This document shows positions 1-57,142 of a stretch of DNA of 64,000 bases, in pieces. The notes beneath the pieces were generated by a model. That model did no database searches. It was not told where the DNA came from and saw only the letters and a program-made list of their open reading frames with translations. The position numbers and the translations under genes are program-made. Position 1 is the stretch's first letter; every line of letters begins with the position of its first letter. This DNA comes from Chiloscyllium plagiosum (Eukaryota), in contig NC_057753.1 of the NCBI RefSeq assembly GCF_004010195.1, positions 13,802,485 to 13,866,484 on the forward strand, read 5' to 3'.

Positions 1-438
1 TAGGTCTGCCTGGTGTGTAAAGTATAAAAGTTGAATTTGATGTCACACAAACAGAATGCGCTATCCAGAACATATAGGGACGTTTTTGACACAGCTCAGG
101 ATATAGACCAGTCCAATGTCCAGCGATGTAATTTTCTCGATGCAGTATCTGCTCTTCAGGCATGAGCTGCAAATGGACACAAAATTTTCGACAGTGAAGG
201 CTACAGACAGACATACTGAGCTCTCTCGATTGCAGCGCACCAGGATTATGCTCTGCCTGCGTACAGAGGTAGTGGAGATTACTCTGTAAGCAAAGTAGAC
301 GTGGCTGATCCGATTGAGGATGCACCCAGTGATGATGACAAAAGAAAACAGACACGGTTACTGCCACGAGATAGTAGGTTACTTACCTGGAGAGACCGCA
401 TGGTCTGCGGGATAGTGTTATAATTGACATCAAGTTTG
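1..438 (-). pseudogene. GPR139-like class A GPCR pseudogene, exon 2 (runs off the left edge)
   Basis: Acceptor cacag|CA at 439/438, then ANLMSIITLSRRPCGLSR*VTYYLVAV, homologous to ANVLAIIILSQGCCGLSRCITYYLLAI of the 4541-5897 gene. In-frame TAA and later disruptions. Exon 1 not found. Confidence 0.85.
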
Positions 439-2599
439 CTGTGAGAAACAGTAGGTTTACTCGTAAAATGTAAGTTGCAATATCTATACTTCATATCACA
501 TGTAATTTTATCAGACGGATGTTGCTCAATTGAGTTCAATGATGAGCAGCTACTTCAGCCAATCTGACATGGAAACCCTCCTCGTCTGAACTTGTGTTAT
601 CTCCAGCCTCCAAATACATAAATTATTTGGTAATAGTTCAGTGTTTCATGTTGAATTACAAATTTGTCAATATCAGGTACCTTGCAGTCAGAGCCTTCCT
701 CTACCAACGCTGTTCTCAAGTCAATTTTTCAATTCCAGTAGTGGACCTATCCAAATTATTAGATAAATAAAATAGTGTGACACATTGCGTATTCATAGCC
801 AGACCTGTTCTCCTTGAAAAATCTATGCTCCCTGATTATATGAGCATTGGTCTGGTAATCACTCAGCTTTATTAACGTCATTGTTTAATTTGTGAAAGAC
901 CACATAGATTAATAACTCGTATGCTGTTCCCATCTGATATCTCAAAATAACTGCACTTTTTCAGTTTTTTCGGTCTTATATTAATCACTCTGCTGTGATT
1001 TTAACTGTCGAGATCACATATTCTGCAACTTCCTTACTCACTAGTCTTGTATTATGTCTTCCTCAGGACATTCTCCATGCTGCACAATTCAGTTATGCAA
1101 CAGATTCAACTTGCCTCTCATTTATTCTAACTGAGAGTTCCCAGGGAGAAGCTAAATTGCATCATGCAGCTCAAACGCAGTTCAATGAACAGATTAACAC
1201 ACATCTATGAAACTTCAGTTTGTAACATTGACAAATGAGTAATTCCATTATCTTAAAACAGACTGTTGGCAACGAATGGTTAGGCTGTTATTCCAAATCC
1301 ACTTGTGATAATTAACCTTTTACCCTCGTATCAACTGGCGTTTCTGATGGGAGATGCTGCCTGGACGTCTTACTACTAACCTGAAATTGCCTCTACTCGT
1401 CTTTTCGCTCACGTGCCTAGGTATTCTATAAATTAGGGAATCAGGTTCGTTCATTTAATTCATTTGTTGGTGACGTTATCATATACATATTAATTATCAG
1501 TATATGAATCGTGATTAACAGTGTGCAAAAAGCCAGCATAGAACACAACGAGCCCAATGCAACCACTCCTGCAAAAATGAACAAAATAGAAAACTTTGTG
1601 TCTCCAACCAAGCCACACAGGCAGAAATTGTATTAGAACTTTTGAGAGTGATGGTGGATGCCACAATAATTATCCGGTCTGCTTTGCTCTGACTGCAGTA
1701 TAGCTTCAATGTATGCTTTGTGAGCTATCTGGGAAGGTGGAGAATACTTCATCATACTCTTGTGACTTGCTGAAAATTCATCGTGATTCTCGAATCAGGA
1801 TATAAATTACTCGCTGCAGTATTTCTAGCCTTTGATCTGCTGTTTCAATGGAGAATACATTTTAGTTTTTTGTCAATGGTTGCACTCAGGCTGTTGATCG
1901 TGGGGTAACGTAGCTCAGGCAATGTCACTTCTAAAGGCCCATCGTTAAATTTGGTCGAAAATGATGCTTTCTCCTGCCACTAAGCCAAACAGTCTTGACA
2001 TCAAGATGAAAAAAATGCTCCAATCCATCACTTCCACGCCAGACATCAAACACTTAACTGTTGAATCCAATTTTCACCATTCTGACTAATTGTGTCACAT
2101 GCGGTGGCGTTTCAACACGCATGCAAACACATCTTAAACGTTTTGCAATTTCTTGTCTCTATTATGTTAGGCAATGGGTTTCGCATAACCAATGCCCTTT
2201 GAGAGATTTTGTTTCCTCAAATCCCTTCTTACCTTAGAACTGTGCCTCCTGTTGTCGACCAGTTTAATAAGGGGAACATTTTCTTCCAGCCTACCCGATC
2301 TCAGACCCGATAAAATTCATGCATCTTATTTAGAATTTAATTGCAACTAAAATGAGCATAGTTGGGATTCGGAATAATGAGGAAGTGAACCACATTTACA
2401 CACAGGCAAAAAGACACACAGCCATATTCAAAGTGACCATGGCGTTCATGTATCCTGTACACCACTGTTATGCTAGCTTGACCAATCTAGTGTTTATTGC
2501 ATTTATTACAAGGTATTTTTAAATGACAATGGTGAACTTCAAACCAGTCTCTACAGGCAAATAACAGATACGGACAAACTAATGAACTACAGAAGCAAT

Positions 2600-3446
2600 C
2601 ATCGCAACACTCAAAAATTAAACTGCATTTGAACATTATTGCAACAAGCGACAAGACACGGCAGCACAGAGGATCTACGAAGAGCAAAGGAAAATCACCA
2701 ATGCAGGAATTAAGAAAGGGTACCCAATGAACACAGCCCCCCAGTTTCTCAGAAACAAACCCAAACAAGCAGACAAAACACGTCCAGAAACCAGAGCCAC
2801 TCTCCCCTACATTAAAGACACCTCAGAAATGACTGCCATTACTAGTCAGACCTCTTGATATCATGATAGCCCACAAACCCACGAACATACTAAAACAGGA
2901 GCTAATGAACTTGAAAGAGCTTATACAGGCAAAACGCAGAACTAATGTAATTTACAAAATACCTTGCAAGAACTGTAACAAGCGCTACATTGGCCAAACA
3001 GTCAGAGAACTGGCCAGCAGGATACATGAACAACAACTAGCCACAAAAAGACATGATCCACTCTGACTAATATCCGTATATATAGATGAGGAAAGGCATC
3101 CCTTCGACTGGGGCAACATATCCATTCTAGAAAAAAGCCAAACAGAGACACATACGAATATTCCTAGAAGCATGGCATTCCAACTGCAATTCTATCATCA
3201 AACACATTAACTTGGATCCATTTGGCACCCATTGAGAAAGAGAACAGGAAATGACATCACCAACTCAAGGAAACCTAATCACTTAAATAGAAAGTGGGCC
3301 ACACCACCAGTGCTTCATCCGGACGCTCACTGATGATGTAACCTAGTATGGTGACAAAACGTCTGAAAACTGATCTTCCAGCTCAGCGAGAAAACCCACA
3401 TCCCGACACCTCAGCCTGAGCTACAAGTCTTCTCAAAACTCACTAA
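2600..3446 (+). mobile_element. Penelope-like retroelement 3' fragment (GIY-YIG endonuclease)
   Basis: ORF 2863-3066 contains NVIYKIPCKNCNKRYIGQTVRELASRIHEQ, a GIY-YIG signature. Downstream stops. Confidence 0.85.
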
Positions 3447-4540
3447 CAGTTGGAAATGTTCCAAAACGTTCCAAAACGTGACAGATGAGTTTCCAATCTT
3501 TGAATGTAATTTTTAAGGAGGCATTAGTAAACCGGCCTGTTTAAGCGACACATTGATAAACTTTTACAAACGGAAATATATTTCAGAAAGGAAAAATGCA
3601 TCAATTCCGTTAAACCTAAGAACGAATGGTCAGTTAGAATGACAAATACTCTCATCTCTTCAAGATCAATTTAAATGTTCGCTATCAAAAGAAACAGAAA
3701 CATCATTAAAAACAACTTTTCAAGAATGATTTATTCTTATACCTGTGTTTATCACTGTTGAACAGTTATGACTCCGTTAGCATATTAGCAGAACATACTC
3801 ATATGTATGATCGTTTATGTTTCGTGTCTGCTTTTTGAGCCTTTTTTTCCTATTCCGCCAAACCATGGCTGATTCCTCGTACCACATCACTTTGTCTGAT
3901 TTTACAATGAATCTTGATTCTGTTAATGTGCACGATCGTTGGGCCGACTGGAGCGTTCGAGTCGCCCTTATTTAAAAAAATACATCAAAGTAGGAAAGTA
4001 GCTAGTTATGATTTATATGCCTGTTTCGTTGACAATGAGACTGATACGGAGTAATGGAAAGGAATGGAGGGTAGAATGAAGGAAGGAAGGAAAGAGGGAA
4101 GGATAGAAGAGTGGCAGGACGAATTATATACTTTTGAAGAAACTGTGGACTTTACAATCATTGTATCCAAAATTAGCAACGAATGAGCACAGTAAGATTC
4201 AAATTAAAAAAAAAGACAGAGGTGAATAAGGAGAAACATGACCTCACTGTTATGACACGAGGGATAATTATTGACCAGGGTTGCAGAGAGAAATCTCTTT
4301 TCATGTTAAAGAAGTAAGGATGGAATATTTTACGTACTTGCTGAGCTAATAGGTACAATCCTTGAGTAAGCATCCATAATGGACAGCTGGATGTTCAAAT
4401 CCTTTTGAGCTGGCAACAGGGAACTATTGGAACAACGTACAGTTCTCCCACAGACCTGAAACCACTAATGGCTGATTCTGGGAGAGGGTTTTACATACCT
4501 AAAGGGAAGTACTGGCAAGATGTTCTGCACATGTTTCTTT

Positions 4541-5897
4541 CTACCACTTAGTGCTGGCAGTTAACATTTGGAAGGGACGCATCAGTATTTTCTTGAGTTC
4601 TTCCCGGAACATTTTCTGTGATACCATGTAGATAAAGATGTTGTTGCAGGAGCTGAGTAAGGTGAGCATGTTGGTTGTCTCTTGAAGGATGTACTTGGGG
4701 TCATTGAAGTTCCGTTTGCCAACGTACTCCTCACCGGTAACCATTCTGTGGAGAAAGCGTACGATATAAGTAACCCACAAGAGGAGGAAACTAAGAGAGA
4801 TGGCAAAGAGCAGGACAATGGACCTCTTGCGGTTCACCATCTCTGAGTCTCCATCGTTTCCAGCTCTGCGGAGTCTCTCGCGGGCTCTGTTGGCCATTAC
4901 AATGTGTCTTACAGTGAGGGCGTTGAACAACACAATGAGAAACAATGGAAGAAAGGGGACTAGTATGTTGTTTAAATATCGGTAGACCTGCCAAGTGGGA
5001 GAAGTGTGGAATATCGTCTTGATATCACAGAACCAGGGCACTGCATCGAGTATATACATGGGCTTGTAGATGAAGTAGAAAGGGACGTTCTTCATGCAGA
5101 GTAGGACATAGATGAGCCCTATGACTCGTGACGCAGTTTTCTTTGTGCAGTATCTGGTCTTCAAATTCTGGCAGCAGATGGCCACAAAACGATCGAAGGT
5201 GAAAGCCACTGTCAGCCAGACGGAGCAATCTCGCGTGGCGTAGATCAGCACAGCACTGAGGCTGCAGCCAGGGGTGGTGGACAACACGCTGTAGCTAAAA
5301 TAGATGCGGCCAATCCTGTTGAGGATACATCCACTGATGATAACTAAGAAATCAGCGACCGCTATCGCCAGCAGGTAGTAGGTGATGCATCGGGAGAGAC
5401 CACAGCATCCTTGAGATAAGATAATAATCGCTAACACATTTGCTATGGAAGATGAAGAAAGAGTGAGATAGATGATACCAAACAATCTCCAAACGCCAGA
5501 CAGCAGCCACATGCAGTCTGACACTGAAAGAGACTTAATCCATCGAATTTCCATGCTGAGACTCAGACTCAAATTCAGACCTTTCAAAATTGTTGTTCAT
5601 TGCTCAATATCCATTGCTGGATTAAAACACTTGTTAGTATAGGAATCACTGCAAACTTCTCTGCTCCAAGTTCTGCTCTCTGACAACTGAGACATATGGG
5701 GACCTGGTTGAAGTCCGTTATATAGAAAAAACATTGGATATTACTGATATTCAGCCAGATCATGAAGGCAAAGAGCAAATTTTTATGAAGAATAAAAAAC
5801 ATAGCTGAGTTAGAACAGCTTGCTTACCGGGTGCACCAATAAGAGCGAGAAATGGATAGAAAATTGCAAAGAACAGCCCATTCGCTGGCCCATGCAT
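4541..5897 (-). CDS. Intact GPR139/GPR142-like class A GPCR, 323 aa; exon 1 5897-5828, exon 2 5442-4541
   Basis: Exon 1 MHGPANGLFFAIFYPFLALIGAP+G|gtaagc (70 nt). Acceptor ttccatag|CA. 70+902=972 nt, open. Seven hydrophobic segments with TVAFTFDRFVAIC (DRY equivalent), PWFC in ECL2, RKRSIVLLFAIS and LLSSCNNIFIY. The first ~48 aa of the ORF-track protein are intronic. Confidence 0.92.
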
Positions 5898-8533
5898 CTT
5901 TGTTTTTCAGCGATTGAAGGGATTACCGAATTTCCAGACTGCAGCCCTGACATACATTCGATGTGTCCCTCATTTATTCTAACTTGGAATCTCCAGAGGG
6001 GCAATTAAGTTAGAACGTGCACGTCAGGTGCAGTTCTGCCAATAAAAAAAAACTCTTATCTTCCATTTGTAACGTTGCTAATGGAAATTTGCAAATCGAA
6101 AAAAATAAAAGGGCAATAAGTTGGCTGCAAAGTCTGCCTTCAACTCTCACCACACGTGGAGTTCTTGAATTAAAACTATGCTGAGACCCCCATTTCGGAC
6201 CTAAAACCATCACTCATTATTTACAGGCTGTTCTAAATATCTCAAGAATCTTTCATCTGTTCAGTTCATGCTTTTTTTTGCTTTTTGATTTTTACAAAGT
6301 GAGTTCACGTATCCATGGTTGAACTGCTCGAAGTCTGTTTTAAAATACTAAGGAAGGAATCTGAGGAGGACACCATCGCAGACAAATACTGAGCAATGTA
6401 GAAGCTGCAGAGCATTTATTTGTTCGGCAAAACCACAAAATTAGTAAGCGCCACCAAGTGTTGGAGGTTCTTATAGAATTTCTGATGCGTTGATAGATGT
6501 TAATGGCCTGGTGTAGTATAAACAGAGACAATATGAGGTAAAGTGATAACTGAAACATGACTTTGAGTAATGGCATCATGCTCATTTGCTGAACTGTTGG
6601 TGTCCTGAAGACAAGAGTCATTGTGCTGAAAGATATATTGAACCGTAACAGGAAAGGCGCTACTAAGGGAGACTTGTGCAATGGGACATGGAATTATATA
6701 TTATCGAATATAACAACACATGACACAGAGCTGAACATAATGAGATAAAAAACGACATATACGATATAGTAGATATTTGGTGCCATGTAATAATAAATAA
6801 GGCAGTCTCATGCAAGATAAACTGAGACAAAAAAGAATGAAGGAATAAATATGTAGTCTCAACTAAAAATGACTGACTTGGACAATCTCCTCTTGAATTT
6901 TGAGAACTGATTTTTCCCAGCATTTTCATATGAACCCTGGTTAATGTTTTAATTGGTAAGCATTCTGACACATTCACAGCGTAGCTAATGATGCAATATA
7001 TATCATGACTGAGCATGCATCTAGAAACAGTGTGTCTCACTCCTATTTGGTGTGGGTGCACTTTACTTGCAAACGTTCCCCTGTTGCTTCGTCCACTGAG
7101 AGAAGTGGCCTGATTACTGCTAGTTATGGAGTCATAAAGGTTTGCAGCACAGAAGGCAACTTTCCGCCCAGATAGTCTGCACAGGTGAAAAACAAGGGCC
7201 TAACTATGCTAATCCCATTCTCCAGCTGTTAGCCCATAGCCTTGTTTGAGTTGGTAATGCAACCATTCATTGAAATACATCCTAAAAGTTATGAGGAATT
7301 CTGTTTCTGCACACCTTACATGCCGCGAATTCCAGAACACCAAGAGATTTGGAATCCCATACATTTCAGAATTTTACATGAGTGAGCATTTAGGATCAAT
7401 GTTCAGAGGAATAACATAATACAGAGACAAGCTACCGAATGGTGTCCAAAAGGATATCCCGGTGAACTTCAGGAGAAAGCCAGACAGAAAAAGGACCAAG
7501 AGGGAATGTGACTTCAGAAACCAATGGTTCCCATGTTTGCTGGTGTACATGACGATCGAAGCTGCCGGGAAGAAAACAAGAAGACATTATCCCTGCATGA
7601 TGTTGAGGCAGTAACATTTGTGATCGCAGATAAACGCGCAGAACAATTGCACACTGAGAGTGACAGGTAAGTAAGAATGGAATAAACACGGATGTAGCAC
7701 TTAAAGCTTTATATTGCTATTATATGCAGCTCAATTTTTCTCTTTCAGTTCAACCTTCAAATCCATAATCAGGTTAGTTATGTATCTTCATAATAAGATC
7801 ACAAAACCTCGGAACAGAAGAAGATTGAGTCTGATCTGCTGATCCTCAACTCCACTTTCCTGCCTACCCCAGAACACTAGATTTCCTTGTTGAGTAAACA
7901 TCCGTCTATTTCAGCCTTCAAAATGTTTAAAGGAACCATCCCAATGCAGTAAAGACTTCCATCGTTTCACCACTTTCTGAGAGAAGAAATTTCTCGTCAG
8001 CTCTGTATTGTCCAAGCCTTATCCCCAGATTATCCCCACTGACCCAATATTGTGTCCAAAAGTGAGACAAAAACTTTCTGCCTCAACCATATGAAGTTCG
8101 CTAAGAACCTTGTATATTTCAGTAAGAAACTAATTTTCTGTAACACTGCGGCCCAGTGATCTAAGATACTGGATAACGATGACCTCTCCCATTCGCACCT
8201 GGCTCATGTGATGTGATACATTCTCACTGATTCTGACAGAGCCGATCTGGTTTCACTGATTTCACTGTCAAAGACTTCTGGCCAGTTGATGAGTTTGTGA
8301 TGCAGCAATAATCCTCATTTCCTGACTGAGAAATGAATTTGAGATGGGATGAATACATGCTGAATCTTAACTGCTGGACCAAAAGGTAAGACATTTAACA
8401 GTTAAAAGGGAAGCCTTTTAACTTTTAAAAATCATAACATTTTTAACTTTTGATCTTTTTCATTTTCCATCTCTTTCATGACTGAAATGTATTTATTGTT
8501 TTGCAAAATTATCATGCCACCGACCTTTACCAG

Positions 8534-8815
8534 CACAGAAAGAAATGTCTTCGTCCATCGTTTCAATTTCAATCATCTGTTCCGATGCTATTTTCCAGCA
8601 CTCGACCCACAGCCTTCGTTGTCGTGGGATTTCTAGTGTACATCTATGTAATATTCTCCATCTAACATTTTATTTAGAAACAAATGAGACTGATTTTCGA
8701 CATGGTAAAACTGTTTTAACACTCCCTGCTGTAAGTGAACTTCATTTTCATCCACAGAGGAAAACATACAGACACTTCCACGAGAGTTAAAGAGGCCGCA
8801 CGAAACTAACTCTAA
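8534..8815 (+). pseudogene. Truncated copy of putative LRR-protein pseudo-exon (paralogue of 59992-60800)
   Basis: Acceptor tttaccag|; colinear with 59992-60273. Reads ...LTLPAVSELHFHP...HES*RGRTKLT, LRR-like. Confidence 0.4.
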
Positions 8816-9440
8816 AAAAGGAACGTGGATATTTGAAAGCAATGATTCTACTCCCGACCCTCACTCATCTGTTGACCTACGCAGGTTACTCTCAACTCAT
8901 TGCCGAATACCCTGACTAGATCTGAGAGACTGAGAGTGGTGAACTGCCTGTCAGTGAAAGGAAATGCCCTGAACTGGAACATCGGCTCAGCTGATAGGTG
9001 GTTCAGTCTTCCAGAGGAAATGGCGACAAATAAAATGGGTTTATATTTCAAAAGATTCATTGACATAAAAATTCTTGTCTAGGCCTAATCGCCAAGGAGA
9101 AGGTGCTGGTCTGTTGGGTTCTTGACCTGTTGCTGCCATTGGTGTATGAGGATACCGGGAGTGTTGTTTGGAAGGGAGTTACGAGATTTTCACTCTATGA
9201 CACAGATGGAATTGCAGTATATTTCCAAGTCAGAATGATGAGTCATCTGGGGACAGGTTACAAGTGGTATTACAACTGATCACTCGGGAATTTCACTTGA
9301 ATTTGGCTTATTGCTGGCTCAATAGCTCCTCAAATAAGTCGAAAGGTCTGGACAATCTCCTCAGATAGATCCATAGATCCCTTCCATTATGACAATGAAA
9401 TCTGGAGTTACTGAATACCAATTATGGAATATTGACTCTC

Positions 9441-9897
9441 CCTTTTTGTATGGGATCTGCTTTCACTCTGCATCAGTGCCACTCATTGCACAGAGATGAA
9501 CCGCGTTGAAGATGACGGCCTTGTTGGTCGTGAACTTGGTAATCTTCGTAATTTTATTCAATTTGACAGAAAATATATCCGTGGAGTCATAATTTCTGTT
9601 TGACATCAATTCTGCAACAAATTAACATGCTGTGGATGCTGCTGTGTTTTCTCACTGTGTTAGTAAACTTTAGGGACAGAATCGTACGTCTTCAGGTTGT
9701 ATGTTACTGTTATTTCCCTCTTTAACTGCTATATCAGGAACAGGTTATTATGTTGTCCCCTGCTGAACTCATGTTAATGAAAGAAAATATGTTACAAACA
9801 TCTGGGCTGGGGTGGGGGGAGTTTGAATTTTGCTGGCAAACAAAATACCTTCTGACAAGACAAATAATCACGAGGAGCAAGACAAGGTCGTTTCTCG
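9441..9897 (-). pseudogene. TCR alpha/delta V pseudogene (family of the 12966 V)
   Basis: Leader-like RNDLVLLLVIICLV. 3' end FSVKLNKITKITKFT...AVHLCAMS. Decayed heptamer with nonamer ACAAAAAGG at 9449-9441. Confidence 0.75.
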
Positions 9898-10766
9898 TGG
9901 TGCTCTGTGGATTTGGAGTCAACGCCTGGGTAAAACTACATCCTTAATTCCCGGTCAAAGGTGACCCAATCAATGGCAAACAATGTGGCCTGCAGCAAAC
10001 CCTCAAGGAACACGTGGACGGGAAGGCATGTCACCGTGAGAACAGCAAACGAAAGCTGCGGGCGACAGTGTGAACAGAAGTGCACAGCGCCACTCAGCTG
10101 GTGAATGTTGAAAACTCTGTGACCACTCTGTTCCCTTAGTAACAGAGTCACTGAGGTGCAAATCGTGGGGATAAAAGATCAAGAATTTTGGAAACATGTA
10201 AAGCAAATCGATGCCATTCAGGCATTCTGTCTGTGACTTCTCTTTGAAAGAGCTGAATAGCTATTCAACGCATCGCTCTTCATAAATTCTGCAGCTATGC
10301 ATGTTTCAATCCATTGCAAGTGTCTTTACAGCACTTTTTCCGAAAATTAGCAGGAAGTCTGCTTTCCTACTTCTCTATCTTCGTGATTTATACTTAATGA
10401 CAAGATTCAATGCATAAAATAAGGCATATTTATTTTATCGTCTATCTGGAAGTGCAGACGGAATTTCTTCAGCAAGTGTTTTGGGCAAAAATTTCAGCCC
10501 CATTGAGAAATCGTTGAAAAGAATAGTAAAGATGCATTGAAACGTAAAGATGCATTGAAACGTAAAGTGAAATAAGCGTGGGGACTTGCTGTTAAATACG
10601 ACGAATTGGGAGGGTTCCTGATCATGGTAATTGCACACATAGAGACTTGGGCCGGATGGGCCAAAAGAAATTTTCTTTGGGTTCTAGTTCCTACCGACAT
10701 TTCCAGGACTGGGAACTTTCGCCATTTGTGGAACATTTAATCGTTTTCTTTCACCCTGTGCTCCAG

Positions 10767-11101
10767 GTCTCAGTGATAGGAATTCTGTCACTCGGCACAA
10801 TCTTTTTCTCACACAGAGGGAGATGTCACTTTAAACTGCACTGATACTGGCGCTACTTATCACTTTTTCTGGTACCATCACTATCCAGACAGACAACCCG
10901 AGTTCGAACTCCAGGTGTATATGACGGGCACCGATACATTTAAGGTGATTTTTGCTCAGCTCTGGTTTTCCGATGCCCGTCAGCAGACAGAAAATTTGGA
11001 CTGATTGACAATCTTGAAGCTGCTATTGTCTGACACCACAGTCTATTGCGGTGCAATGGGCCTTGCGGTGTTGCAAAATGTGAAAACACCGTACACTGAC
11101 T
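10767..11101 (+). pseudogene. TCR alpha/delta V pseudogene (paralogue of the 39655 V)
   Basis: Acceptor ctccag|; DVTLNCTDTGATYHFFWYHHYPDRQPEF...WFSDARQQTENLD*LTILKLLLSDTTVYCGAMG. Frameshift in FR1, a stop, second canonical Cys lost. Heptamer decayed to TGCGGTG; nonamer ACACTGACT. Confidence 0.88.
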
Positions 11102-12965: not shown

Positions 12966-13447
12966 ATGATGGGGAAATATCTCACACCAATCCTCATAAT
13001 CGTGTCTATGCTCAGTAAGTATCTCTTTCTCAGAAAAGGGCCAAATATTACAAAAAGAATGTTATTGTTTATCGACGAGATGGTGACGATTACGTTGAAC
13101 AATATGAGTACGATATTGATTGTCATTTTTACTTTGTTTCACGTGTTAGAATGGAGCCAGCAGGATACAGTGGAACAATCGGTTGCTGAAATGACGGTTG
13201 AAGAGGGAAAGGACATCGCCCTCACCTGCAATTTGAAGACAAGTGATTCTAACCCTAATGCATACTGGTACAGTCAGCGACACATGCAGCCTCCAGAGTT
13301 CATGTTTCGATTTATTGGGACGAATCTGCACAGGAACACTGGCATCAGTGACCGATTTTCTTCAAATAAAACTGGCAAGATCACTGAACTATTTATTCGC
13401 AATGTCCTCATCTCCGACAGCGCCGTGTATCTCTGTGCCATGCAGCT
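12966..13447 (+). CDS. TCR alpha/delta variable gene segment, apparently intact (leader 12966-13014, V exon 13150-13447)
   Basis: Leader MMGKYLTPILIIVSML+A|gtaagt; acceptor ttag|AA. DTVEQSVAEMTVEEGKDIALTCNLKTSDSNPNAYWYSQ...DSAVYLCAMQL with both canonical Cys and the Trp. RSS follows. Confidence 0.92.
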
Positions 13448-13487
13448 CACATTGATACAGAGATATAGTGGATCCTGTACAAAAACC
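13448..13487 (+). other. Recombination signal sequence (CACATTG - 24 nt - ACAAAAACC)
   Basis: Heptamer 13448-13454; perfect nonamer 13479-13487. Confidence 0.9.
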
Positions 13488-27978: not shown

Positions 27979-28486
27979 TATTTTTCAATTGTGTGGAGGC
28001 AAATGCTCAGGCCTGTGAAACATTTATACGTGCAGCTCGCTCCATCGTAGTAGGTGGCGGTGTCTTCAACTTTTATATCTCAAATTACACTGCTACACTG
28101 GACTGGTCACTGTTTGGCTGAAGAAATATTCACTTTGAGAGTAATAAAATGTAGTGCCAGAGAGAATACAGGTGAGAGCGAGAGATTGACCTTCCTTCCT
28201 GTTAACTACTGCCTGGCCCTTTGTCACTGACGAGCCAAAGGAATCTGGAAATTCAACAGAGAGAGGAGGGAAGGGGAGAGAGATAGAGAGAGATAGAAGG
28301 GATATATATATATCCCAGTGACACAGAGCCAGGCAGCAGTTAACAGGAAGGAAGGTCAATCTCTTTCTCTCTCTCTCTGTTTGTCTCTTGACAGACATAG
28401 AGAGAGACAGAGAGAGAGAGAGAGAGCGCGTATTGGTTACCATGAAGACATGAACTGAACAGCATGGCTAAATTAAAAAAAAACAT
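27979..28486 (-). pseudogene. IgNAR-like (NAR-TCR) V pseudogene: leader 28486-28441, V exon from 28244
   Basis: Leader MFFFNLAMLFSSCLH+G|gtaacc; acceptor ttccag|AT. DSFGSSVTKGQAVVNRKEGQSLALTCILSGTTFYYSQSEYFFSQT...(internal deletion)...DIKVEDTATYYD, with YFF where WY is usual. Decayed 23-RSS: CACAGGC (28017-28011), 23 nt, TGAAAAATA. Confidence 0.7.
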
Positions 28487-29930: not shown

Positions 29931-30659
29931 ACATACATACAATACCCTCGAAGGCTTTATTCTCCCCTCTGATGGAAATGAACCATTCGACACTTTGCAT
30001 TTTAAACTACATTAACTTCAACTATGATAACATTTTGCATTGGAATATTGGACGTCCGTCGTGCATGTTAAGTTTAGCTGAAAAAATTAAGAGATCTACA
30101 GTATCCACACAACCAATAATTTTCAAGTAATGCTCCCCTCTCAGGTACCCTTCTATTTAAGCTCATAGTGAGGTCAGCTATTTCTGCGTGATATTTGTTT
30201 TGAAAAATACATGAAATGAAAGTAATTGGCATGAAAACGCTCAGTACCAAGCAAAATGCAAAAGTAAATATAATACTTAAATGCACTAAATAATTGAGGA
30301 GTAACAGGAATGAGGAGCAGGTCTCATTTTAGGTTACGTAAAGGAACTCAGTGTAGTATATGCCACCGGGTACATAACATGATGAGTACAGAAATGTCTT
30401 TGCCTGTTGGGTCGGGGTATCCACAGAGTGTGAGGCTAGAAAGCTAGTGCATAACAGAATCATTTGTAGCATCGATGTTTCGAATAGATGCCATGAAACC
30501 ATGAGTTAATCTGTTTGTTCAATGACCTGCATCAAAGGTTCGGATGATGCCTCAATTGTGCCTCTGGAGAATCTCACATGAAATAAATGAAGGAGGATTT
30601 GAGAGGTTCTCTGAGTTAATTCCTAAAGTATCAGTAATTCCCTTATTTTCATAAAGACA

Positions 30660-32467
30660 ATGCATGGCCCAGCGAATGGCCCAGTTTTTGCCGTTTGCTA
30701 TCCCATTCTCGCTTCTATTGGTGTTCCTGGTAAGTCATGACCAAAGTAAGTTCTATCGCTTTTCTTAACATCCAGATTATTTGGACATTCTTTTGCAGAA
30801 TGGGCTGAATATTGTGAATAATCAGAGCTATACGAGCATTATGAACTTTTACCGTGTTACCATTTCTTGAAACAGACAATAGCACATTACGCATTACTTG
30901 ATGTACGAAAGTGCAACCTTTGCACTTGCATCATGGAGTATTAATGCATGTTAGAAACTTATCATTCTGTATATTTCTTACTTTGCTGAAGTACATATTG
31001 TAATATAATACATTGCATAAATTTTAATTTGTAATATTACTGAACATTAAGCTTTACTCTAATTTCTTGAAATGTTCTTTTGTTTTTGTACTGTTTATCA
31101 TTACGACGTATCATAATGTGGTAAAATTGCATTTTCAATCACTGCTTTTGTCGTCATTTTGTAAAATGAATTTTTTGCATAATCATCATAATAGATGCAT
31201 TGTAGTATAAAAATACAGTAGTTATTACAGAAATCTCGAATGACACATTTAGATGGATGCAATTGTCGCAGGAGATCAAATTCCCACTGACCAGTCCTTG
31301 TTGTTAATGCAATCTTCAGAGATAATTGCGGCACATTTGAACAAATCGAACGAAGGTGCAATACTTTAAGTCAATTATGCTTGATGTTCTGTGATGGTAC
31401 GTCTTTTACAGCTGGACTTTACATTTGCTGATTGCAGTTCTTAATGTTGAGTGGTATGTGATTGTCGCTGACAACTCAATGTTCTTTTGTTCATTCCTCG
31501 TTAGAACTTGTAAAGGTTCAAGGCACATTTGATTCCTCAAATGGTTTATTATATATGGTCAGACTTATATATGGTTTGATGACAGATTTAACAAGACATT
31601 TTGATACCAACCGAAAGAAGGAGGTATAAGGGCAGGTGAGCAAAGGTTTGAACAAGGAGCTCGGTCAGAAAGAACGTGGTGAATACATATGGAGAAATGA
31701 AGCCATTATGGACAGAATACCTTCAGGTATTAAAGAGCAGCTAAAGGGAAACAGAAAAAAAATGTTGATAGAATGATTCATGTGAGGGCTATACGAAAGT
31801 CCATGATTGGATGTTCACTCTGATCCCAGACGTTTGTACAGTTGCTGAAACTATGGAGCTATTTGAATCATTGTAAGAATAAGAGTTATTTAAACTGAAA
31901 TATTTCTGTAACTGGAGACGAGGTGGGCAAACTGTTCGAGGATGAAGTAGATAAATAAAGAGAAATGCTTTGGTTGATAATAAGCTGGATAGATTGACTC
32001 AGTGACCAGAGTTGTGGACCAGGTCAAACTCCTTCAAATTATTTTAAGGAAAAAGGACTGGAACCTAACTTTTTATTTATTTAAAGGAAAGTGTAGGACG
32101 TCGTGTTTCAGATGTCTTTCGATTGCTCCAACACTAGGCTTGAGCAAAACACACTTTATTCTTAATACATACCAAAAGTGAAACAAGAAAGTGAGGATTG
32201 TCACAGCTTTAACTCTAAGGGCAAACTTAATGAAATAATTTATTATTTAATTTTTAATCGTCAACTGGTCAAGTCCAGCAGTATGCCATAAAGACAAACG
32301 AGGCAAAGGCAAATGCAGCAGAACAAACTTTCCTCACGTGCTATCTCCAGTACAGGAGAAAGGAGCACTGAAATAACTAATCCTGCAGAGAAAAGAGAGG
32401 GCTTGAAAGAGAGCAAAAGAGAGAAATAGAGCGATGAAGCCTTTCGCTACAGTTGACAGCGAGGTGC

Positions 32468-32498
<31 letters not shown>

Positions 32499-34256
32499 AC
32501 TGTATGCGTCAGCTTCAACAACCAACTCCAAACCCCAACTGAAAGCAAAACTGAAATTCTAGGTCTCCGTGAGTCTGACTTCAGCCACTCATGATTCTTT
32601 CACGTAATTTAACAAACGCAGTCAAGAAAATCGAAGTTATTTGCCCACTATTTCTCAACCAGCCACATTGCACTATTGTAACAACACCAGCCGCTAAAGA
32701 GAAGTAGATCTGAACAAGTCTCCCTTCAAGAAAGCATGGTGGCTCAATAGTTAGTACTGCTACCTGGCAGATCCAGGTACCCAGGTTCAAACGCACTCTT
32801 GGGTGAATGTCTGTGTGTAGTTTGTACATTCTCCCAATATCTACATGGTTTACTCCAGTGCTCTGGTTTTCCTCCCACCAGTCAAGGATGTGAAGGTTCA
32901 CGATAGATTGGCGATGCTAAATTGCTTGTAACGTACAGGGATGTGTAGCTGAGATGGATAAACCATTGGAAATGCAGGGTTAGAAAGATAGGTTTGGGTG
33001 GTGTGACATGTAGGTATATTCTGTGGAGGTTTGGTGTGGACTTGGTGCGCCAAATGATCTGTTGGACTGCTTTTACACAGTCGGGCTTGTACGATGGCAA
33101 GCTACCATCACACTGGAGAGTAGATTTGAGAAGAGGGATTGAATGAATAAGCTTTGGTATTGGCAAATGCAAAAACCACCATTAGATATCAAATGAATAA
33201 CCAAGGGATTTATGACAGCCAGTGTGTCGATGGCAAACGAACAAGATTAAGGGTCTTCCAAAACGAAATGAAGAAAACTGCAGTTGCGGTTTGGAATCAT
33301 TTATTTCCCATGCCTCCCTTCTTCCATTCACAGCGAATTTTGTGGCGATCATAATCCTCACCCGAGGTCGCTGCGGTCTCTCCCGGTGCATTACCTACTA
33401 CCTTGTGGCAATTGCGGCAACTGATTTGCTTATCATCATCACTGTTGTCATCCTAAACCGGATTGGAAGCATATATTTCCGGAACAGTGTACTCTCCACA
33501 ACTCCTTTTTGCAGGCCCAGCGCTGTGCTGGCCTATGCAACAAGAGATGGCTCAGTCTGGCTGACTGTTGCCTTTACCATTGACCGTTCTGTAGCCATCT
33601 GCTGCCCAAGACTCAAGACCAGATACTGCAATCAGAAAACTGCGTTGCTAGTTATTGGAATACTCTGCTTCCTGAGCTGGATCAAGAATGTCCCGTTCTA
33701 CTTCGTCTTCAAGCCTTTGTACATGGTGAACAAAGTGCCTTGGTTCTGTGTGATCAAGTCAAATTTCTACACTTCTCTCAGTTGGCAGGTGTATGACTGG
33801 CTGGATCACATTCTTGCCCCGCTTTTGCCTTTCTTCCTCATCCTTCTGCTCAATGTCCTGACCGTTAAACACATTTTGGCGGCCAGCAGAGCCCGCCGGA
33901 GGCTCTGGGGTGCTGAGAATCGTGAAGATCAGGAGGTGGCTAACCGCAAGAGATCCATTGTTCTTCTCTTCGCAATATAACTCAGCTTCCTCCTTTTGTG
34001 GGCCACCTATATTGTGTATTTCCTCTACGGTCAAGTGACAGGTCATGGCTATGTCACCAGCGTGGATTTCAATGATCCTCAGTATATTTTTCAAGAAACA
34101 ACAAACATGCTGCAGTTGTTGAGTTCCTGCAATAATGTCTTCATCTATGCAATAGCCCAGAAAAAGTTTAGAGAGGAGGTGAAGAAGGTTCTGATTTGGC
34201 CACTGACTACGATCACTCAATTCTTTCAACAGTACATCAAACTGCATAATCGTTAA
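30660..34256 (+). pseudogene. GPR139-like GPCR with one in-frame nonsense codon; exon 1 30660-30729, exon 2 33334-34256
   Basis: Exon 1 MHGPANGPVFAVCYPILASIGVP+G|gtaagt; acceptor cacag|CG. Colinear with the 4541-5897 protein. TAA at 33978-33980 where the paralogue has Ser (FAISLSF); the frame continues unchanged to 34256. Confidence 0.92.
32735..33085 (+). mobile_element. Old HE1-like SINE in the GPCR intron
   Basis: GGTGGCTCAATAGTTAGTACTGCT...GGTTCAAA...CTGGTTTTCCTCCCACCAGTCAAGGATGTG. Confidence 0.75.
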
Positions 34257-39312: not shown

Positions 39313-39351
39313 AGTCAGTATACGAGGATTTCACTCCATTCTGTCACTGTG
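39313..39351 (-). other. 23-RSS (CACAGTG - 23 nt - ATACTGACT)
   Basis: Perfect heptamer 39351-39345; non-consensus nonamer 39321-39313. Confidence 0.85.
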
Positions 39352-39793
39352 AGGTTTATTGCACAGTAATACACGACAGTGTCAGACAGCGGAAGCTGCG
39401 AGATTTTCAATCGGTACGACTTCTCTGTCTTCTGGAGGGCATCAGAAAACCGGGTCTGAGCGAAATCTGCCTTCACGTCAGCACCACCGCCCGTGTGCCT
39501 CCGAACTGCAAACTCGGGCTGTTTGCCTGAGTATTGACGGTACCAGAACAAGTAGTAAACATCGTCAGCATAGTTGCAATTTAAAGTGACATCTTCTCCC
39601 TCTGTCTGCATGAACGAAAAATACTGTTGACTAATAGGAACTGCATCGCTCAGATCTGGAACATAGCATTTAAGAAAATAGAAATCAACGACTAAACGTT
39701 CGAGAAAAGTGAACTGAATTTAGAAATACATGATCTTATCTATTATAAATAGAATTTAGAGTAGAAAAAGCATATTAGGACTGTTAGGCTCAT
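39352..39793 (-). pseudogene. TCR alpha/delta V with open V exon (39655-39352) but defective leader
   Basis: DLSDAVPISQQYFSFMQTEGEDVTLNCNYADDVYYLFWYRQYSGKQPEF...SDTVVYYCAIN is open. The leader from ATG 39793 is 54 nt (wrong phase), contains TAA, and the donor reads G|ATAAG. Confidence 0.85.
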
Positions 39794-43016: not shown

Positions 43017-43055
43017 AATTTTTGCACAGGCCGACTGCTTCTGCGTATCACTGTG
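43017..43055 (-). other. 23-RSS (CACAGTG - 23 nt - GCAAAAATT)
   Basis: Heptamer 43055-43049; nonamer 43025-43017. Confidence 0.92.
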
Positions 43056-43493
43056 GAGCTCAGTGCACAGTAGTAGACAGCAGAGTCGGAGACTTGAACC
43101 TCGGAGATATTTAAAGGAATTGTTTTCTTTTCCTTGTCCAAATGAGCAGAAAACCGGTCGGTGAAATCTTTAGATCTGTCCCCTTGTTGCTTATTGTATC
43201 TCCGCAGTAAATATCTCAGAGCTTCCCCAGGAGTCTGGATGTACCAAAAGAGAGTTTCTCCAGCTCATGCTGCTGCTGTGTAACGGCAATTCAGTGATGT
43301 AGTATGGCCTTCCTGAACGGTCCATTCAGTTGGATCCTGGGAAACTGAATACTGGCCGCTCGTTCCTGCAACAAAACATATGAAGTGTTAAAATTTTGAA
43401 TAAGAAAGTAAAATCAAATGTAAATGACGAATTTAACTCTGACTTACCGGGCACCATGGCCATTATTATCAGTAAAAAATACAGTGAACACAT
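43056..43493 (-). pseudogene. TCR alpha/delta V with a single TGA in CDR1 (leader 43493-43448, V exon 43365-43056)
   Basis: Leader MCSLYFLLIIMAMVP+G|gtaagt. GTSGQYSVSQDPTEWTVQEGHTTSLNCRYTAAA*AGETLFWYIQTPGEALRYLLRR...SDSAVYYCALS; stop at 43267-43265. Confidence 0.92.
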
Positions 43494-49705: not shown

Positions 49706-49756
49706 TATTATTCTAGATCAAATTTTGTCCATATGCCAAATATTTGTGCATTGAGC

Positions 49757-54846: not shown

Positions 54847-54858
54847 NNNNNNNNNNNN
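54847..54858. other. Assembly gap
   Basis: Run of N. Confidence 1.
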
Positions 54859-55850
54859 AATCCTCCTCTGGGCTACAGGTTTCCCAGAAGGAAGATGAGG
54901 TCTTGTTCCGCCAATTTGCTGTGAACTTCGCTGTGGCAAAGAAGCAGGCGAAGGGCAGGAAGGGTAGAAACGGACTGTGCAGGTGTTTTAAAATAGGCAG
55001 TGACTGTGACGTAGGCCCCTGCGGGCCAGGCTGTGACACTTGGCGAAATGTGCTCTGACTTTACATTTTGTCTCATAGAACATAAAACATAGAAAAATAC
55101 AGCACAGAACAGGCCCTTTGGCCCACGATGTTGCGCTGAGGTTTAATCCGAATGTAAAATATAATAACTTAACCTACACACCCCTCAACTCACTGCCATC
55201 CATGTGATGTCAAAGATTCTCCACAAGTAAATAAAGGGTGATGCTCACTGAAGTAGACTACATCGTAAAGACTGGATACAATAAACCAGTTTGTACGAGA
55301 AGTAGATTTACCTCTCTCTTTCCTGGAAGGACTGTTTGCAGCGCTGGATGGATATGGGCGTGATGTGCTGACAGGTTTTGCAATTCTTTGGTGTCAGGGA
55401 AAGGTTGTTGGGGAGGTTGACGTGAACCAAGCATTGGCGAAAGGGACAGTTCTCGCAGACGTCAGACAGAAGTCGGGAGAGGAAGTTATTCTTGGTGATG
55501 GGTTTAGTGGGAGTTGGTAGAAATATTTAAGGTTGATTTGTTGGATGTGGGAATGGGAGGGGTGGAAGGTAAGAAAAAGGGGGACCTTGCCTTTATTATA
55601 TTTAGGATGCGATTTAGAGGAGTAGAGCAGGGAATGGAGGAGGTGTAGTGGAAGGCTATCTGCGTGCCAGATCCAGGAAAGACACGTTTTTAACTATAGG
55701 TCGGCATCTGGGATGTTTAGGAGTGCAATGTCTCCTCTTCCGAATAGATTTCAGTGGAGGCAGAGGAAATGGGATAATGTGATGAAGTTCTTGCAGGGTA
55801 CTGTTTGGGTGGCGGTGTAATCCAGGTGACTGTGGAGTCTGTAATGTCCG
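54859..55850 (-). mobile_element. Old Penelope-like fragment with a short CR1-type tail inserted (~55075-55205)
   Basis: LLLCHSEVHSKLAEQDLIFLLGNL resembles a GIY-YIG C-terminus. Confidence 0.55.
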
Positions 55851-56269
55851 GATGTTGATTGTTATTCAGTATATCACATCATTTTAATGAAATTAGTTCA
55901 TTAAAACAAAAGAATTATGTGGTGACGCGGTTTGTCTCGAGGACTGCGCTTTTTCAAAGGGAAGGCATGTCGTTTTGTATCCTTATCTGTGTGACACACA
56001 AACGTCTTTTGGGTTTCAAAGGAAAGACGCCAGTTTGCATGCTACTACCAAGCAGTGAGGAGCAGGATGATCTTCCGGAAACGAACGAGTGTAGACATTT
56101 TACACCTCAAACGAAATGGTATGCCTGATTCTCAGAGCAGTATCTTGGGACATGGTGAAGTGCGGTTATAAACAATTAGGAAGTGAGGAAGGAAGGTAGC
56201 TTTAACTGGCCATTTCCTGATTGAAGAGTGAGTTCTGCATGTTGAGACGCAGGTTTGAAGCTGAGCAGT

Positions 56270-57142
56270 GTGAGACAGTTTCATTAGAAGTTTGCTGTGA
56301 ATAAAAATCTTCTTGAGCTCGTCGCAACATCTATTCTGAGATATTGTGTAGATCAATACGTTGTTGCAGGAACTAAGTAGCTGGAACATGTTGTTCATAT
56401 CTCTCAGGATGCAGTCTATATTTTGGAAACCTAGGCCGTTGAAGTCTTTATCATCTTTAACCATACAAGGAAGAAATGTGATATTTCGTTCGACCACACA
56501 TCAGCAGAAAGCTGACTGAAATAGCAGAGAGCAGTATGATGGACCTCCTCAGATTTTCCACCTCTGGATCTCTGCCACACTCAACATTCCTCAGTTTCTT
56601 GTGTGCTTTTATGCCGGCTCGGGTAAGTTGTAGAGTGAGAACATGAAGCGACAGAATGAGGAGAAAAGGCTGAAAAGGTGAGAATTTGTTTTCCCTCCAA
56701 TCATCGGCAGGTCAGGCAGGTAAGGTGTAAAAGATGGATTTGATGTCACACAACATGGAAGTTTAAGGATGTTGTACAAAGGGGCATTTTTGACGCAACG
56801 CAGGATGCAGATCATTCCAAAGAACAGCGATGCAATTTTCTTAATGCAATATCGGACCTTGGGGCATTGACAGAAAATGGGCACAAAACGGTCGACAGCA
56901 AAGGTTGCAAAGAGCCAGACTGAGGTGTCCCGGCTACAACTGACCACGATACTACTCAGCCAGCCTACAGAGGTAGTGGAGAATACACTGTAAGTAAATT
57001 AGCTGCAGCTGATCCGAGCGAGGGTGCACGCAGAGATGGTGATAAGAAAATTGGACAGGGCAATTCTAACTAGATAGCAGGTTATACACCTGGAGAGCCC
57101 ACATGGTCCGCGGGATACTATTATAATTGACACCCAAGTTGG
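56270..57142 (-). pseudogene. Decayed GPR139-like GPCR exon 2
   Basis: Acceptor cacag|; RDTSVWLFATFAVDRFVPIFCQCPKVRYC, CVKNAPLY and NMFQLLSSCNNVLIYTISQ, with multiple frameshifts. Paralogue of 1-438. Confidence 0.9.

What the first reader, a model, noticed from the sequence alone, without database searches (positions are those of the whole stretch)
1..57142. A GPR139-like GPCR family is interleaved with TCR alpha/delta V segments
Seen: four paralogous GPCR loci lie among RSS-bearing V segments (1-438 pseudo, 4541-5897 intact, 30660-34256 one stop, 56270-57142 pseudo). All share a phase-1 acceptor at the same position, and the two better-preserved ones share a 70-nt exon 1. Known: passenger families sit in or beside antigen-receptor loci (trypsinogens in TRB, olfactory receptors beside mammalian TRA), and GPR139-like genes are expanded in sharks. 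Inference: these GPCRs undergo birth-and-death together with V segments. They would be deleted or inverted clone by clone during V(D)J recombination and may fall under TCR-locus regulation, giving T cells rearrangement-dependent GPCR dosage. I do not know of this arrangement being described.
Basis: partly seen in the sequence, partly recalled or inferred. Interest (0 to 1): 0.8.

Follow-up and report, generated by a model that had tools for sequence, protein, structure and literature searches.

The report
Orphan receptor genes among shark TCR V segments
In this shark DNA, genes of a much-expanded family of orphan cell-surface receptors sit scattered among T-cell-receptor variable segments and were at least once copied together with them, much as smell-receptor genes sit among the first TCR-alpha variable genes of mammals.

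Summary
tblastn finds four paralogous class-A GPCR loci. One is an intact two-exon, 323-codon gene. One is whole except for a single TAA. Two are decayed. Seven Ig V-set segments lie between them; three keep a readable 23/24-spacer RSS. The mixed order stands on gap-free sequence, and both assembly gaps lie outside every gene.

New here: a 6-10 kb block holding a GPCR plus a V was duplicated as one unit. The intact gene shows purifying selection. The closest GPCR relatives crowd onto one contig per species, and in three species that contig also carries the nearest relatives of V1.

Not shown: linkage to D/J/C (only an unchecked note), firm alpha/delta typing of every V, and any expression. No RNA reads were found, in thin runs of unknown tissue. 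Rearrangement-dependent GPCR dosage is therefore unsupported.

Best reading: a passenger family evolving by birth-and-death inside a TCR V array. This matches OR genes among mammalian TRAV genes and trypsinogens in TRB. My searches found no paper describing it.

The scan's first readers noted the same pattern elsewhere in this genome (seven notes; 15 notes).

The parts
3..441 (-). GPCR A: pseudogene, 5' part of exon 2 (runs off the window start); one stop and two frameshifts
   Evidence: tblastn in three frames; acceptor kept; 14 of 19 aligned family-invariant residues kept
4541..5442 (-). GPCR B exon 2 (intact, stop codon included)
   Evidence: ORF; 7tm_1 E 7e-21; 96% identical to a 323-aa Hemiscyllium ocellatum protein; 33 of 33 invariant residues kept
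5828..5897 (-). GPCR B exon 1, 70 nt, ATG to GT donor, phase 1
   Evidence: read from sequence
5970..5999 (-). 30-nt motif with AATAAATGA, about 75 nt upstream of B's ATG; shared with C; possible core promoter
   Evidence: pattern taken from these two copies, so the match itself is circular
9484..9719 (-). V5 pseudogene (V1 family), decayed RSS
10822..11058 (+). V6 pseudogene (V2 family), one stop, decayed heptamer
12966..13487 (+). V1: leader 12966-13011, intron, V exon 13150-13445, RSS 13448-13487 (CACATTG, 24-nt spacer, ACAAAAACC); looks functional
   Evidence: V-set E 4e-13
28099..28230 (-). V7: truncated V fragment behind a splice acceptor
   Evidence: no Pfam match
30561..30729 (+). GPCR C: shared upstream motif (30561-30590) and exon 1 (30660-30729, 70 nt)
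33334..34256 (+). GPCR C exon 2; single TAA at 33978-33980, otherwise whole
   Evidence: 33 of 33 invariant residues kept
39313..39635 (-). V2 (open frame 39635-39357) with RSS 39351-39313
43017..43360 (-). V3 (one stop in CDR1) with RSS 43055-43017
56297..57141 (-). GPCR D: pseudogene, five stops, middle third scrambled
   Evidence: 20 of 31 invariant residues kept
61991..62211 (-). V4 pseudogene (V1 family)
17..10436 (.). Copy 1 of the duplicated GPCR+V block (17-1036 and 7241-10436); carries about 6.2 kb extra that holds gene B
   Evidence: self-blastn
56720..63023 (.). Copy 2 of the duplicated GPCR+V block, colinear and in the same orientation, 69-76% identical
   Evidence: self-blastn

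Best explanation
The window is a stretch of a translocon-type TCR V-segment array, most likely alpha/delta, in a hemiscylliid shark. Members of a large, elasmobranch-wide expansion of two-exon GPR139-like class-A receptor genes have settled in this array as passengers.

Both families turn over by local segmental duplication and decay. At least one duplication copied a GPCR and a V together. One GPCR (B) is kept as a working gene under purifying selection, one (C) has only just been hit by a nonsense codon, and two (A, D) are wrecks. The GPCRs are ordinary germline genes with their own TATA-like upstream motif.

If the array is the one that rearranges, their removal or inversion on rearranged chromosomes of T cells is a by-product with no shown function. 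This step is inferred.

Shown: the genes, their state, the interleaving, the co-duplication, the constraint on B, and the same-contig clustering in other species. Inferred: alpha/delta identity, linkage to D/J/C, somatic loss in T cells, and the passenger (non-T-cell) role.
For: - Four GPCR loci and seven Vs are interleaved on gap-free sequence.
- There is no J-like or Ig-C-like motif anywhere in the 64 kb, so this is a V array and not an Ig minicluster.
- Block 17-1036 / 7241-10436 is colinear with 56720-57731 / 58713-63023 at 69-76% identity and carries GPCR A/D plus V5/V4.
- B against C gives dN 0.23, dS 1.77 (saturated) and ratio 0.13.
- B and C each keep 33 of 33 family-invariant residues, against 20 of 31 in D.
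- A second individual (X5) has B open, with 9 coding changes: 6 silent, 3 conservative, and no indel in the coding sequence.
- The full-length H. ocellatum orthologue folds as a confident 7TM receptor (pLDDT 88.8).
- GPR139 is the best solved relative by sequence.
- Among the 120 listed relatives of B, most sit on one contig per species: whale shark 10 of 11, basking shark 6 of 6, horn shark 9 of 12, brownbanded bamboo shark 8 of 12, zebra shark 5 of 7.
- The nearest V1 relatives of horn shark, cloudy catshark and a devil ray lie on contigs of the same lengths as those species' GPCR hits. The catshark protein is named 'T cell receptor alpha chain MC.7.G5-like'.
- The H. ocellatum relatives of B (P0001) and of A/D (P0076) share one 5.14-Mb scaffold.
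- The Atlas's nearest clusters for V1 are TCR alpha/delta V (0.97).
Against:
- In H. ocellatum the 17 listed relatives lie on 10 contigs, and in C. punctatum 4 of 12 lie on three other chromosomes. The family is not confined to one locus.
- V1's best solved relatives are Ig light chains and TCR beta chains.
- Of the 30 V1 relatives looked up, only 2 carry a TCR-alpha name, 3 clusters an Ig-lambda name and 1 a VpreB name.
- Five of the seven Vs are dead, so this may be a decaying part of the array.
- Linkage to D/J/C rests only on an unchecked note.
- There are no expression data of any kind.
Confidence: 0.7

Rival explanations
1. Functional coupling. The GPCRs are expressed in T cells under TCR-locus control, so V(D)J deletion or inversion gives clones different GPCR dosage, and that matters.
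For: Position only. Vs lie on both strands, so both deletional and inversional joins would affect the GPCRs. B is under constraint, so it has some function.
Against: No RNA read lay on B in two single-cell poly(A) runs of the same species label. This is weak evidence: only 2 and 6 in 100 of the runs were read, and the tissue is unknown. B and C carry their own conserved upstream motif. Three of the four copies here are dead or nonsense-hit. The known passengers (ORs in TRA, trypsinogens in TRB) have no T-cell role (recalled).
Confidence: 0.05
2. A chemosensory-type or immune-sensing repertoire. The family's placement in antigen-receptor (and, by unchecked notes, MHC class I-like) regions is an old, retained linkage, like the OR-TRA and OR-MHC linkage of mammals, and not a mere accident of duplication.
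For: - The family is large: 1758 proteins at E <= 1e-5, and the best 120 are nearly all elasmobranch.
- Expansions are order-specific in the tree.
- Intact genes and pseudogenes are mixed.
- The extracellular N-terminus is about 5 residues.
- There are weak Pfam side-hits to chemoreceptor families: Srx in C and several relatives, 7tm_4 in one skate protein.
- Sharks have few ORs (passage in PMC8455134).
- Unchecked notes place other arrays among MHC class I-like genes.
Against: There are no expression data. Two catshark and shark olfaction papers have 0 mentions of GPR or orphan receptors in their main text. The nearest folds are peptide receptors. Linkage could be chance in duplication-prone DNA.
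Confidence: 0.15
3. The Vs here are orphons or relics outside the working locus, so the arrangement has no bearing on recombination at all.
For: Five of seven Vs are pseudogenes. V2's nonamer is poor. No D, J or C lies in the window.
Against: V1 has a leader, an open frame and a near-consensus RSS. An unchecked note places a TCR-delta D/J cluster 686 kb beyond the window. Pseudogene-rich stretches are normal in V arrays (recalled).
Confidence: 0.08
4. Assembly artefact: unrelated repeats were stitched together.
For: There are two gaps in the window, and the region is rich in repeats.
Against: The interleaving stands within gap-free pieces. Contigs of the likely source run and of a second individual cover 2000-6500 in all 30 bins. 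Relatives of B and of A/D share one scaffold in another species.
Confidence: 0.02

Closest known systems
Olfactory receptor genes among the 5' TRAV genes of mammals (human OR10G2 and OR4E2; three mouse Olfr genes between TRAV1 and TRAV2)
   Same: Class-A GPCR genes of a multigene family lie between V segments of the TRA/TRD array (PMC4574546 passages).
   Different: In mammals these are two or three genes at the 5' edge only, and they are true ORs. Here the GPCR family is different (GPR139-like). There are four copies in 64 kb in the body of an array, one duplicated together with a V. By unchecked notes the pattern recurs over more than 1 Mb.
Trypsinogen genes inside the TRB locus (8 in human, 20 in mouse, 5 in cattle)
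   Same: A passenger family embedded in a TCR locus, duplicating there, with conserved synteny (PMC2685407 passages).
   Different: Proteases, not receptors. They form two blocks rather than a full mix with the Vs.
Human GPR139 (PDB 7VUG, 9M42) and the GPR139/GPR142 pair
   Same: GPR139 is the best solved relative by sequence (E 5e-11). The alignment starts at the same N-[IV]-L-x-[IV]-I-I-L-S-Q stretch, and both have N-x-F-x-Y where other class-A receptors have NPxxY.
   Different: Identity is only about 21% in the structural alignment. There are dozens of copies per species instead of one. The N-terminus is almost absent. One-to-one orthology was not tested.
Elasmobranch antigen-receptor complex (IgH clusters linked to TCR alpha/delta; Flajnik et al. 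2025, PMC12227049)
   Same: The same kind of region in related sharks, including the epaulette shark. TCR-alpha/delta-type V exons are scattered among other genes (section 6 read).
   Different: The paper's main text never mentions GPCRs. Its coordinate table is a supplement that I could not open.

Membership tests
GPR139/GPR142-type class-A GPCR | Seven-transmembrane rhodopsin-family domain | tested here: met
   Pfam 7tm_1 E 7e-21, profile positions 2-260 of 260. The orthologue P0001 models as 7 helices plus helix 8, pLDDT 88.8.
GPR139/GPR142-type class-A GPCR | GPR139 is the nearest characterised receptor by sequence | tested here: met
   phmmer against PDB: GPR139 E 5.4e-11, next GPR21 at 5.3e-9. 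NCBI names most relatives 'probable GPR139'. The margin is small (45.5 against 39 bits).
GPR139/GPR142-type class-A GPCR | GPR139 is the nearest fold | tested here: inconclusive
   Foldseek ranks NTSR1 first and GPR139 27th and 48th. All hits are class-A receptors with similar scores.
GPR139/GPR142-type class-A GPCR | One-to-one orthology or shared synteny with vertebrate GPR139 or GPR142 | not tested
   No outgroup tree with bony-vertebrate GPR139/142 was built. The many copies per species point to a lineage-specific expansion, not an orthologue.
GPR139/GPR142-type class-A GPCR | Same exon-intron structure as GPR139 | not testable with these tools
   The shark genes have a 70-nt exon 1 and a phase-1 intron. 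The human gene structure is only recalled, and human sequence was not looked up.
TCR alpha/delta V gene segment | V-set Ig domain with Cys, Trp and Tyr-x-Cys landmarks | tested here: met
   V1 V-set E 4e-13. Landmarks are present in V1, V2 and V3.
TCR alpha/delta V gene segment | Split leader and a 23-spacer RSS at the 3' end | tested here: met
   V1 has a 46-nt leader exon, a phase-1 intron and a 24-nt spacer. V2 and V3 have a perfect heptamer with a 23-nt spacer. This does not distinguish alpha/delta from beta, gamma or IgH V.
TCR alpha/delta V gene segment | Translocon array: no J or C within a few kb | tested here: met
   No J-like (FGxG) or C1-like motif in six frames of the 64 kb. This was a motif scan only.
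TCR alpha/delta V gene segment | Nearest named relatives are TCR alpha or delta V | tested here: inconclusive
   For: the Atlas's top clusters are TCR alpha/delta V for V1. The nearest protein (57%) is named TCR alpha chain-like. V2 and V3 hit TCR alpha/delta and VH chains. Against: V1's best PDB hits are Ig light and TCR beta chains. Distant relatives carry Ig-lambda names. V2's Atlas hits are mixed.
TCR alpha/delta V gene segment | Physical linkage to TRD/TRA D, J and C; use in rearranged transcripts | not testable with these tools
   Only an unchecked scan note places a TCR-delta D/J cluster 686 kb beyond the window.
Passenger gene family inside an antigen-receptor locus | Non-Ig genes lie between V segments and duplicate there | tested here: met
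   The order G G V V V V G stands on gap-free sequence. A GPCR+V block was duplicated as a unit.
Passenger gene family inside an antigen-receptor locus | Expressed and used outside lymphocytes | not tested
   No informative RNA data.

The most novel reading that the evidence does not exclude
The elasmobranch GPR139-like expansion is an unrecognised sensory (chemoreceptor-like) or immune-sensing receptor repertoire. On this reading its growth inside the TCR alpha/delta V array, and by unchecked notes among MHC class I-like genes, is the cartilaginous-fish counterpart of the OR-TRA and OR-MHC linkage of mammals. That would point to an ancient, retained neighbourhood of fast-evolving class-A receptor families and antigen-receptor or MHC genes, not a chance landing.
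Probability: 0.15. Interest if true: 0.75.

Novelty: new variant of a known kind. Interest (0 to 1): 0.45.

Why it matters
Sharks have very few classical odorant receptors, yet they carry dozens of these orphan receptors per genome. My searches found no paper that treats them. Knowing that a large share of them grow inside the TCR V array has three uses.

1. It flags a gene family that annotation of shark antigen-receptor loci has passed over.
2. It gives a second, independent case of class-A receptor genes mixed with TRAV-type segments. The mammalian OR-TRA neighbourhood can therefore be asked about as a rule and not as a curiosity.
3. It offers a natural marker. Sharks have nucleated red cells (recalled), so GPCR copy loss in T cells against red cells would read out V usage and deletional versus inversional joining.

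On present evidence the immunological meaning is small. The receptors look like passengers.

Tried and rejected
- A strict RSS pattern (perfect heptamer and perfect nonamer) found nothing. A looser scan was needed.
- The word-based homologue search with V1 gave only two chimaera Ig-like proteins. A second try scoring V1 inside a longer ORF gave nothing.
I fell back on contig lengths as a coarse proxy.
- I looked for gene models that fuse a V with a GPCR, as a sign of adjacency in other species. None of the 7 over-long GPCR models has a V-set domain, and none of the 3 V models has a 7TM domain.
- Two more batches of V1 relatives gave no further shark contigs.
- RNA: 0 reads on gene B in X21 and X22. 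The 11 reads of X21 all lie partly on a high-copy repeat at 2604-3509. This does not show absence of expression.
- Exon 1 and the upstream motif were sought for A and D and not found.
- No lesion shared by A and D, and no frame-breaking indel shared by V4 and V5, could be shown. So I cannot say whether the block was copied alive or dead.
- B-V6 and C-V2 are not a second co-duplicated cassette. One pair is head-to-head and the other tail-to-tail.
- An IgNAR-like V, claimed by another note for 23234-28486, did not turn up in my ORF list or motif scans. I found only the V7 fragment. This was not a proper test.
- My first tree read C one base out of frame. That was my slip. It was corrected, where C has no close partner among the 120 rows (best 71%). 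The placement of A and D with P0076 comes and is flagged there as a meeting of long branches.
- Supplements are closed. Table S1 of PMC12227049 (scaffold coordinates of the shark antigen-receptor complex) may bear on linkage and on whether other gene models were seen there.

Full report
WHAT IS THERE: THE GPCRs.
The window is vertebrate DNA of about 40% G+C. tblastn with the one long GPCR ORF finds four loci and no others above noise.

Gene B (minus strand) has a 70-nt exon 1 (5897-5828, ATG to GT), a 385-nt intron, and exon 2 (5442-4541). Together they make 323 codons.

Gene C (plus strand) has the same 70-nt exon 1 (30660-30729), a 2.6-kb intron, and exon 2 (33334-34256). Exon 2 aligns to B without a gap at 66% identity and has a single TAA at 33978-33980.

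A (3-441) has a stop and two frameshifts and runs off the window. D (57141-56297) has five stops and a scrambled middle. All four keep the acceptor at the same spot, in phase 1. Exon 1 and a 30-nt upstream motif with AATAAATGA survive only at B and C.

Every search used exon 2 alone.

WHAT IS THERE: THE V SEGMENTS.
Seven V-set segments lie between the GPCRs.
- V1 is complete. It has a 46-nt leader exon, a phase-1 intron, an open V exon and the RSS CACATTG-24-ACAAAAACC.
- V2 is open, with a perfect heptamer, a 23-nt spacer and a poor nonamer.
- V3 has one stop and a good 23-RSS.
- V4, V5, V6 and V7 are pseudogenes or fragments.

They fall into three families: V1/V4/V5, V2/V6 and V3. No J-like or constant-domain motif occurs in any frame. 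This is therefore a V array of the translocon kind, not an Ig minicluster.

GAPS.
The N runs at 34444-34682 and 54847-54858 lie 188 nt behind C's stop and next to LINE debris. No GPCR or V touches them. The piece 1-34443 alone holds A, B, V5, V6, V1, V7 and C, and the piece 54859-64000 holds D and V4. The interleaving does not depend on the gaps.

WHAT THE RECEPTORS ARE.
Pfam sees a full rhodopsin-family domain. The best solved relative by sequence is human GPR139 (E 5e-11), just ahead of GPR21, NTSR1 and NMUR2. The alignment begins at the shared N-x-L-x-x-I-I-L-S-Q stretch, and both proteins have N-x-F-x-Y in place of NPxxY.

The 5.8-billion-protein search gave 1758 hits at E <= 1e-5. The best 120 are nearly all from sharks and rays, and most are named 'probable GPR139' by NCBI. 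The best is a 323-aa Hemiscyllium ocellatum protein at 96% identity, so the window comes from a close relative of that shark. The run search codes the organism's name.

The orthologue models as a confident 7TM receptor with an extracellular N-terminus of about 5 residues and a beta-hairpin second loop. Foldseek ranks peptide receptors first and GPR139 27th, which does not discriminate. 'GPR139-like' is fair as a nearest-neighbour label. Orthology was not tested.

CONSTRAINT.
- B against C gives dN 0.23, dS 1.77 (saturated) and ratio 0.13. The two are old paralogues that were both kept by selection for most of their history.
- Against an alignment of 42 relatives, B and C each keep 33 of 33 invariant and 65 of 70 nearly invariant residues. 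D keeps 20 of 31 and 30 of 62. C's nonsense codon is therefore recent, or an allele, or an error.
- Contigs of a second individual (X5; other sample and study, same species label) cover the gene. They show nine coding changes, six silent and three conservative (M>L, M>V, V>I), with all indels outside the coding sequence. The table says two further differences were not shown.

CO-DUPLICATION.
Self-blastn shows that 17-1036, 7241-8818, 8810-9785 and 9818-10436 are colinear, in the same orientation, with 56720-57731, 58713-60276, 61279-62272 and 62355-63023. Identity is 69-76%. The block carries GPCR A/D and V5/V4, so a receptor and a V were copied as one unit.

Copy 1 has about 6.2 kb extra, which holds gene B and a high-copy repeat. 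B is more distant from A (67%) than A is from D (74%). So B was either already there and was lost from copy 2, or it moved in later.

I found no lesion shared by A and D, and no shared frame-breaking indel in V4 and V5. The state of the block when it was copied is open. B-C (inverted, 71%) and V6-V2 (inverted, 70%) are further old duplicates but do not form a second cassette.

OTHER SPECIES.
As a coarse proxy I used the contig length printed with each protein. Among the 120 listed relatives of B, these fractions sit on one contig per species:
- whale shark: 10 of 11
- basking shark: 6 of 6
- horn shark: 9 of 12
- C. punctatum: 8 of 12
- zebra shark: 5 of 7
- cloudy catshark: 3 of 4

Against this, the 17 H. 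ocellatum proteins lie on 10 contigs, several of them small scaffolds. Four C. punctatum proteins lie on three other chromosomes.

A full HMMER search with V1 gave 1032 hits at E <= 0.001, of which 150 were listed. I looked up 30 of them. The closest (47-57% identity) are elasmobranch proteins. A cloudy-catshark protein is named 'T cell receptor alpha chain MC.7.G5-like' and lies on the 330,819,199-base contig. Two horn-shark proteins lie on the 59,489,666-base contig, and one devil-ray protein on the 135,896,713-base contig.

In the tree, B groups with P0001 (H. ocellatum, 5.14-Mb scaffold) and two C. punctatum proteins with 100% SH-aLRT support. A and D group with P0076, which is on the same 5.14-Mb scaffold (96% support, flagged as a meeting of long branches). 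This shows co-location at chromosome or scaffold scale in several species. It does not show interleaving there.

ARE THE Vs ALPHA/DELTA?
The evidence is moderate.
- For: the Atlas's nearest clusters for V1 are TCR alpha/delta V and TVA families (0.97-0.96). The nearest named protein is TCR-alpha-like. V2 and the V3 piece hit TCR alpha, V-delta-1 and VH chains in the PDB. The array is of translocon type.
- Against: V1's best PDB hits are Ig light chains and six TCR beta chains. V2's Atlas hits are mixed. More distant V1 relatives carry Ig-lambda or VpreB names.
- Unchecked first-reader notes of this scan place a TCR-delta D/J cluster 686 kb beyond the window, with NAR-TCR elements and many more GPCR/V mixtures within about 1.3 Mb before it. 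I could not verify any of these.

EXPRESSION.
No listed run that holds the stretch is on record as RNA. Two single-cell poly(A) runs of the same species label were laid on 2000-6500. X21 (about 2 in 100 read) gave 11 reads, all partly on a repeat at 2604-3509. X22 (about 6 in 100 read) gave none. The tissue is unknown, so this says nothing either way.

LITERATURE.
- Searches for GPR139 with shark terms, with 'T cell receptor' and 'locus', and for the NCBI product name gave nothing relevant (listings only).
- Flajnik et al. 2025 (PMC12227049; outline and sections 6, 15 and 18 read, plus a term search) map the shark antigen-receptor complex, epaulette shark included. They note alpha/delta-type V exons between IgH clusters. 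The main text has 0 occurrences of GPR, GPCR or 'G protein'. Its coordinate table is a closed supplement.
- Two shark olfaction papers have 0 mentions of GPR or orphan receptors (term search only).
- The whale-shark genome paper notes a paucity of GPCRs and ORs in cartilaginous fishes (passage).
- Precedents: human OR10G2 and OR4E2 and three mouse Olfr genes lie between TRAV genes (PMC4574546 passages). Trypsinogen genes lie and duplicate within TRB (PMC2685407 passages).

VERDICT.
The best reading is a passenger receptor family evolving by birth-and-death inside a TCR V array, a shark variant of the mammalian OR-in-TRA and trypsinogen-in-TRB cases. Somatic loss in T cells is a fair deduction if the array rearranges. 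A functional dosage effect has no support. The bolder reading, an overlooked sensory or immune receptor repertoire tied by old linkage to antigen-receptor and MHC regions, is open and testable.

Noticed in passing
window 2453-3509: High-copy repeat. Summed contig depth rises from about 6-20 to 10^3-10^5 in both DNA runs, with many internal joints. The only RNA reads laid in the call fall here.
   Followed up: no
window 19407-19715, 20915-21223, 32734-32925: Two copies of a roughly 310-nt element are 95.8% alike and lie 1.5 kb apart. A third copy, at 74%, lies in the intron of GPCR C. It looks SINE-like.
   Followed up: no
window 48367-54544: LINE debris, with reverse transcriptase and endonuclease domains, present as two inverted, 64-70% alike copies. 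A 161-nt tandem pair lies at 50548-50869 (97.5%). The 12-N gap sits just beyond it.
   Followed up: partly
window 5970-5999 (-) and 30561-30590 (+): B and C share a 30-nt upstream motif (CCTCTGGAGA ... AATAAATGA) about 75 nt before the ATG, although their silent sites are saturated. It may be the family's core promoter.
   Followed up: partly
window 39270-39320 (-) and 11095-11150 (+): Behind the RSS of V2 and V6 (one family), the odd nonamer A[TC]ACTGACT is followed about 15-20 nt later by a shared GGGTCACAGCTGC block. This may be the fixed-distance motif that another note calls CTCF-like.
   Followed up: no
window 2000-6500: A second individual of the same species label differs from the window at about 1-2% of non-coding sites (for example 14 differences in a 712-nt contig piece). 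That is high for one species.
   Followed up: no
window 14139-14204 (+): Weak further match to the end of V1's framework 3 (tblastn E 1.3). It is possibly one more V relic just behind V1.
   Followed up: no
window 28250-28440: Long CT/GA-rich simple sequence directly upstream of the V7 fragment, which starts at a splice acceptor without a leader. Another note reads this region as a fossil NAR-TCR cassette. I found no IgNAR-like V there.
   Followed up: partly
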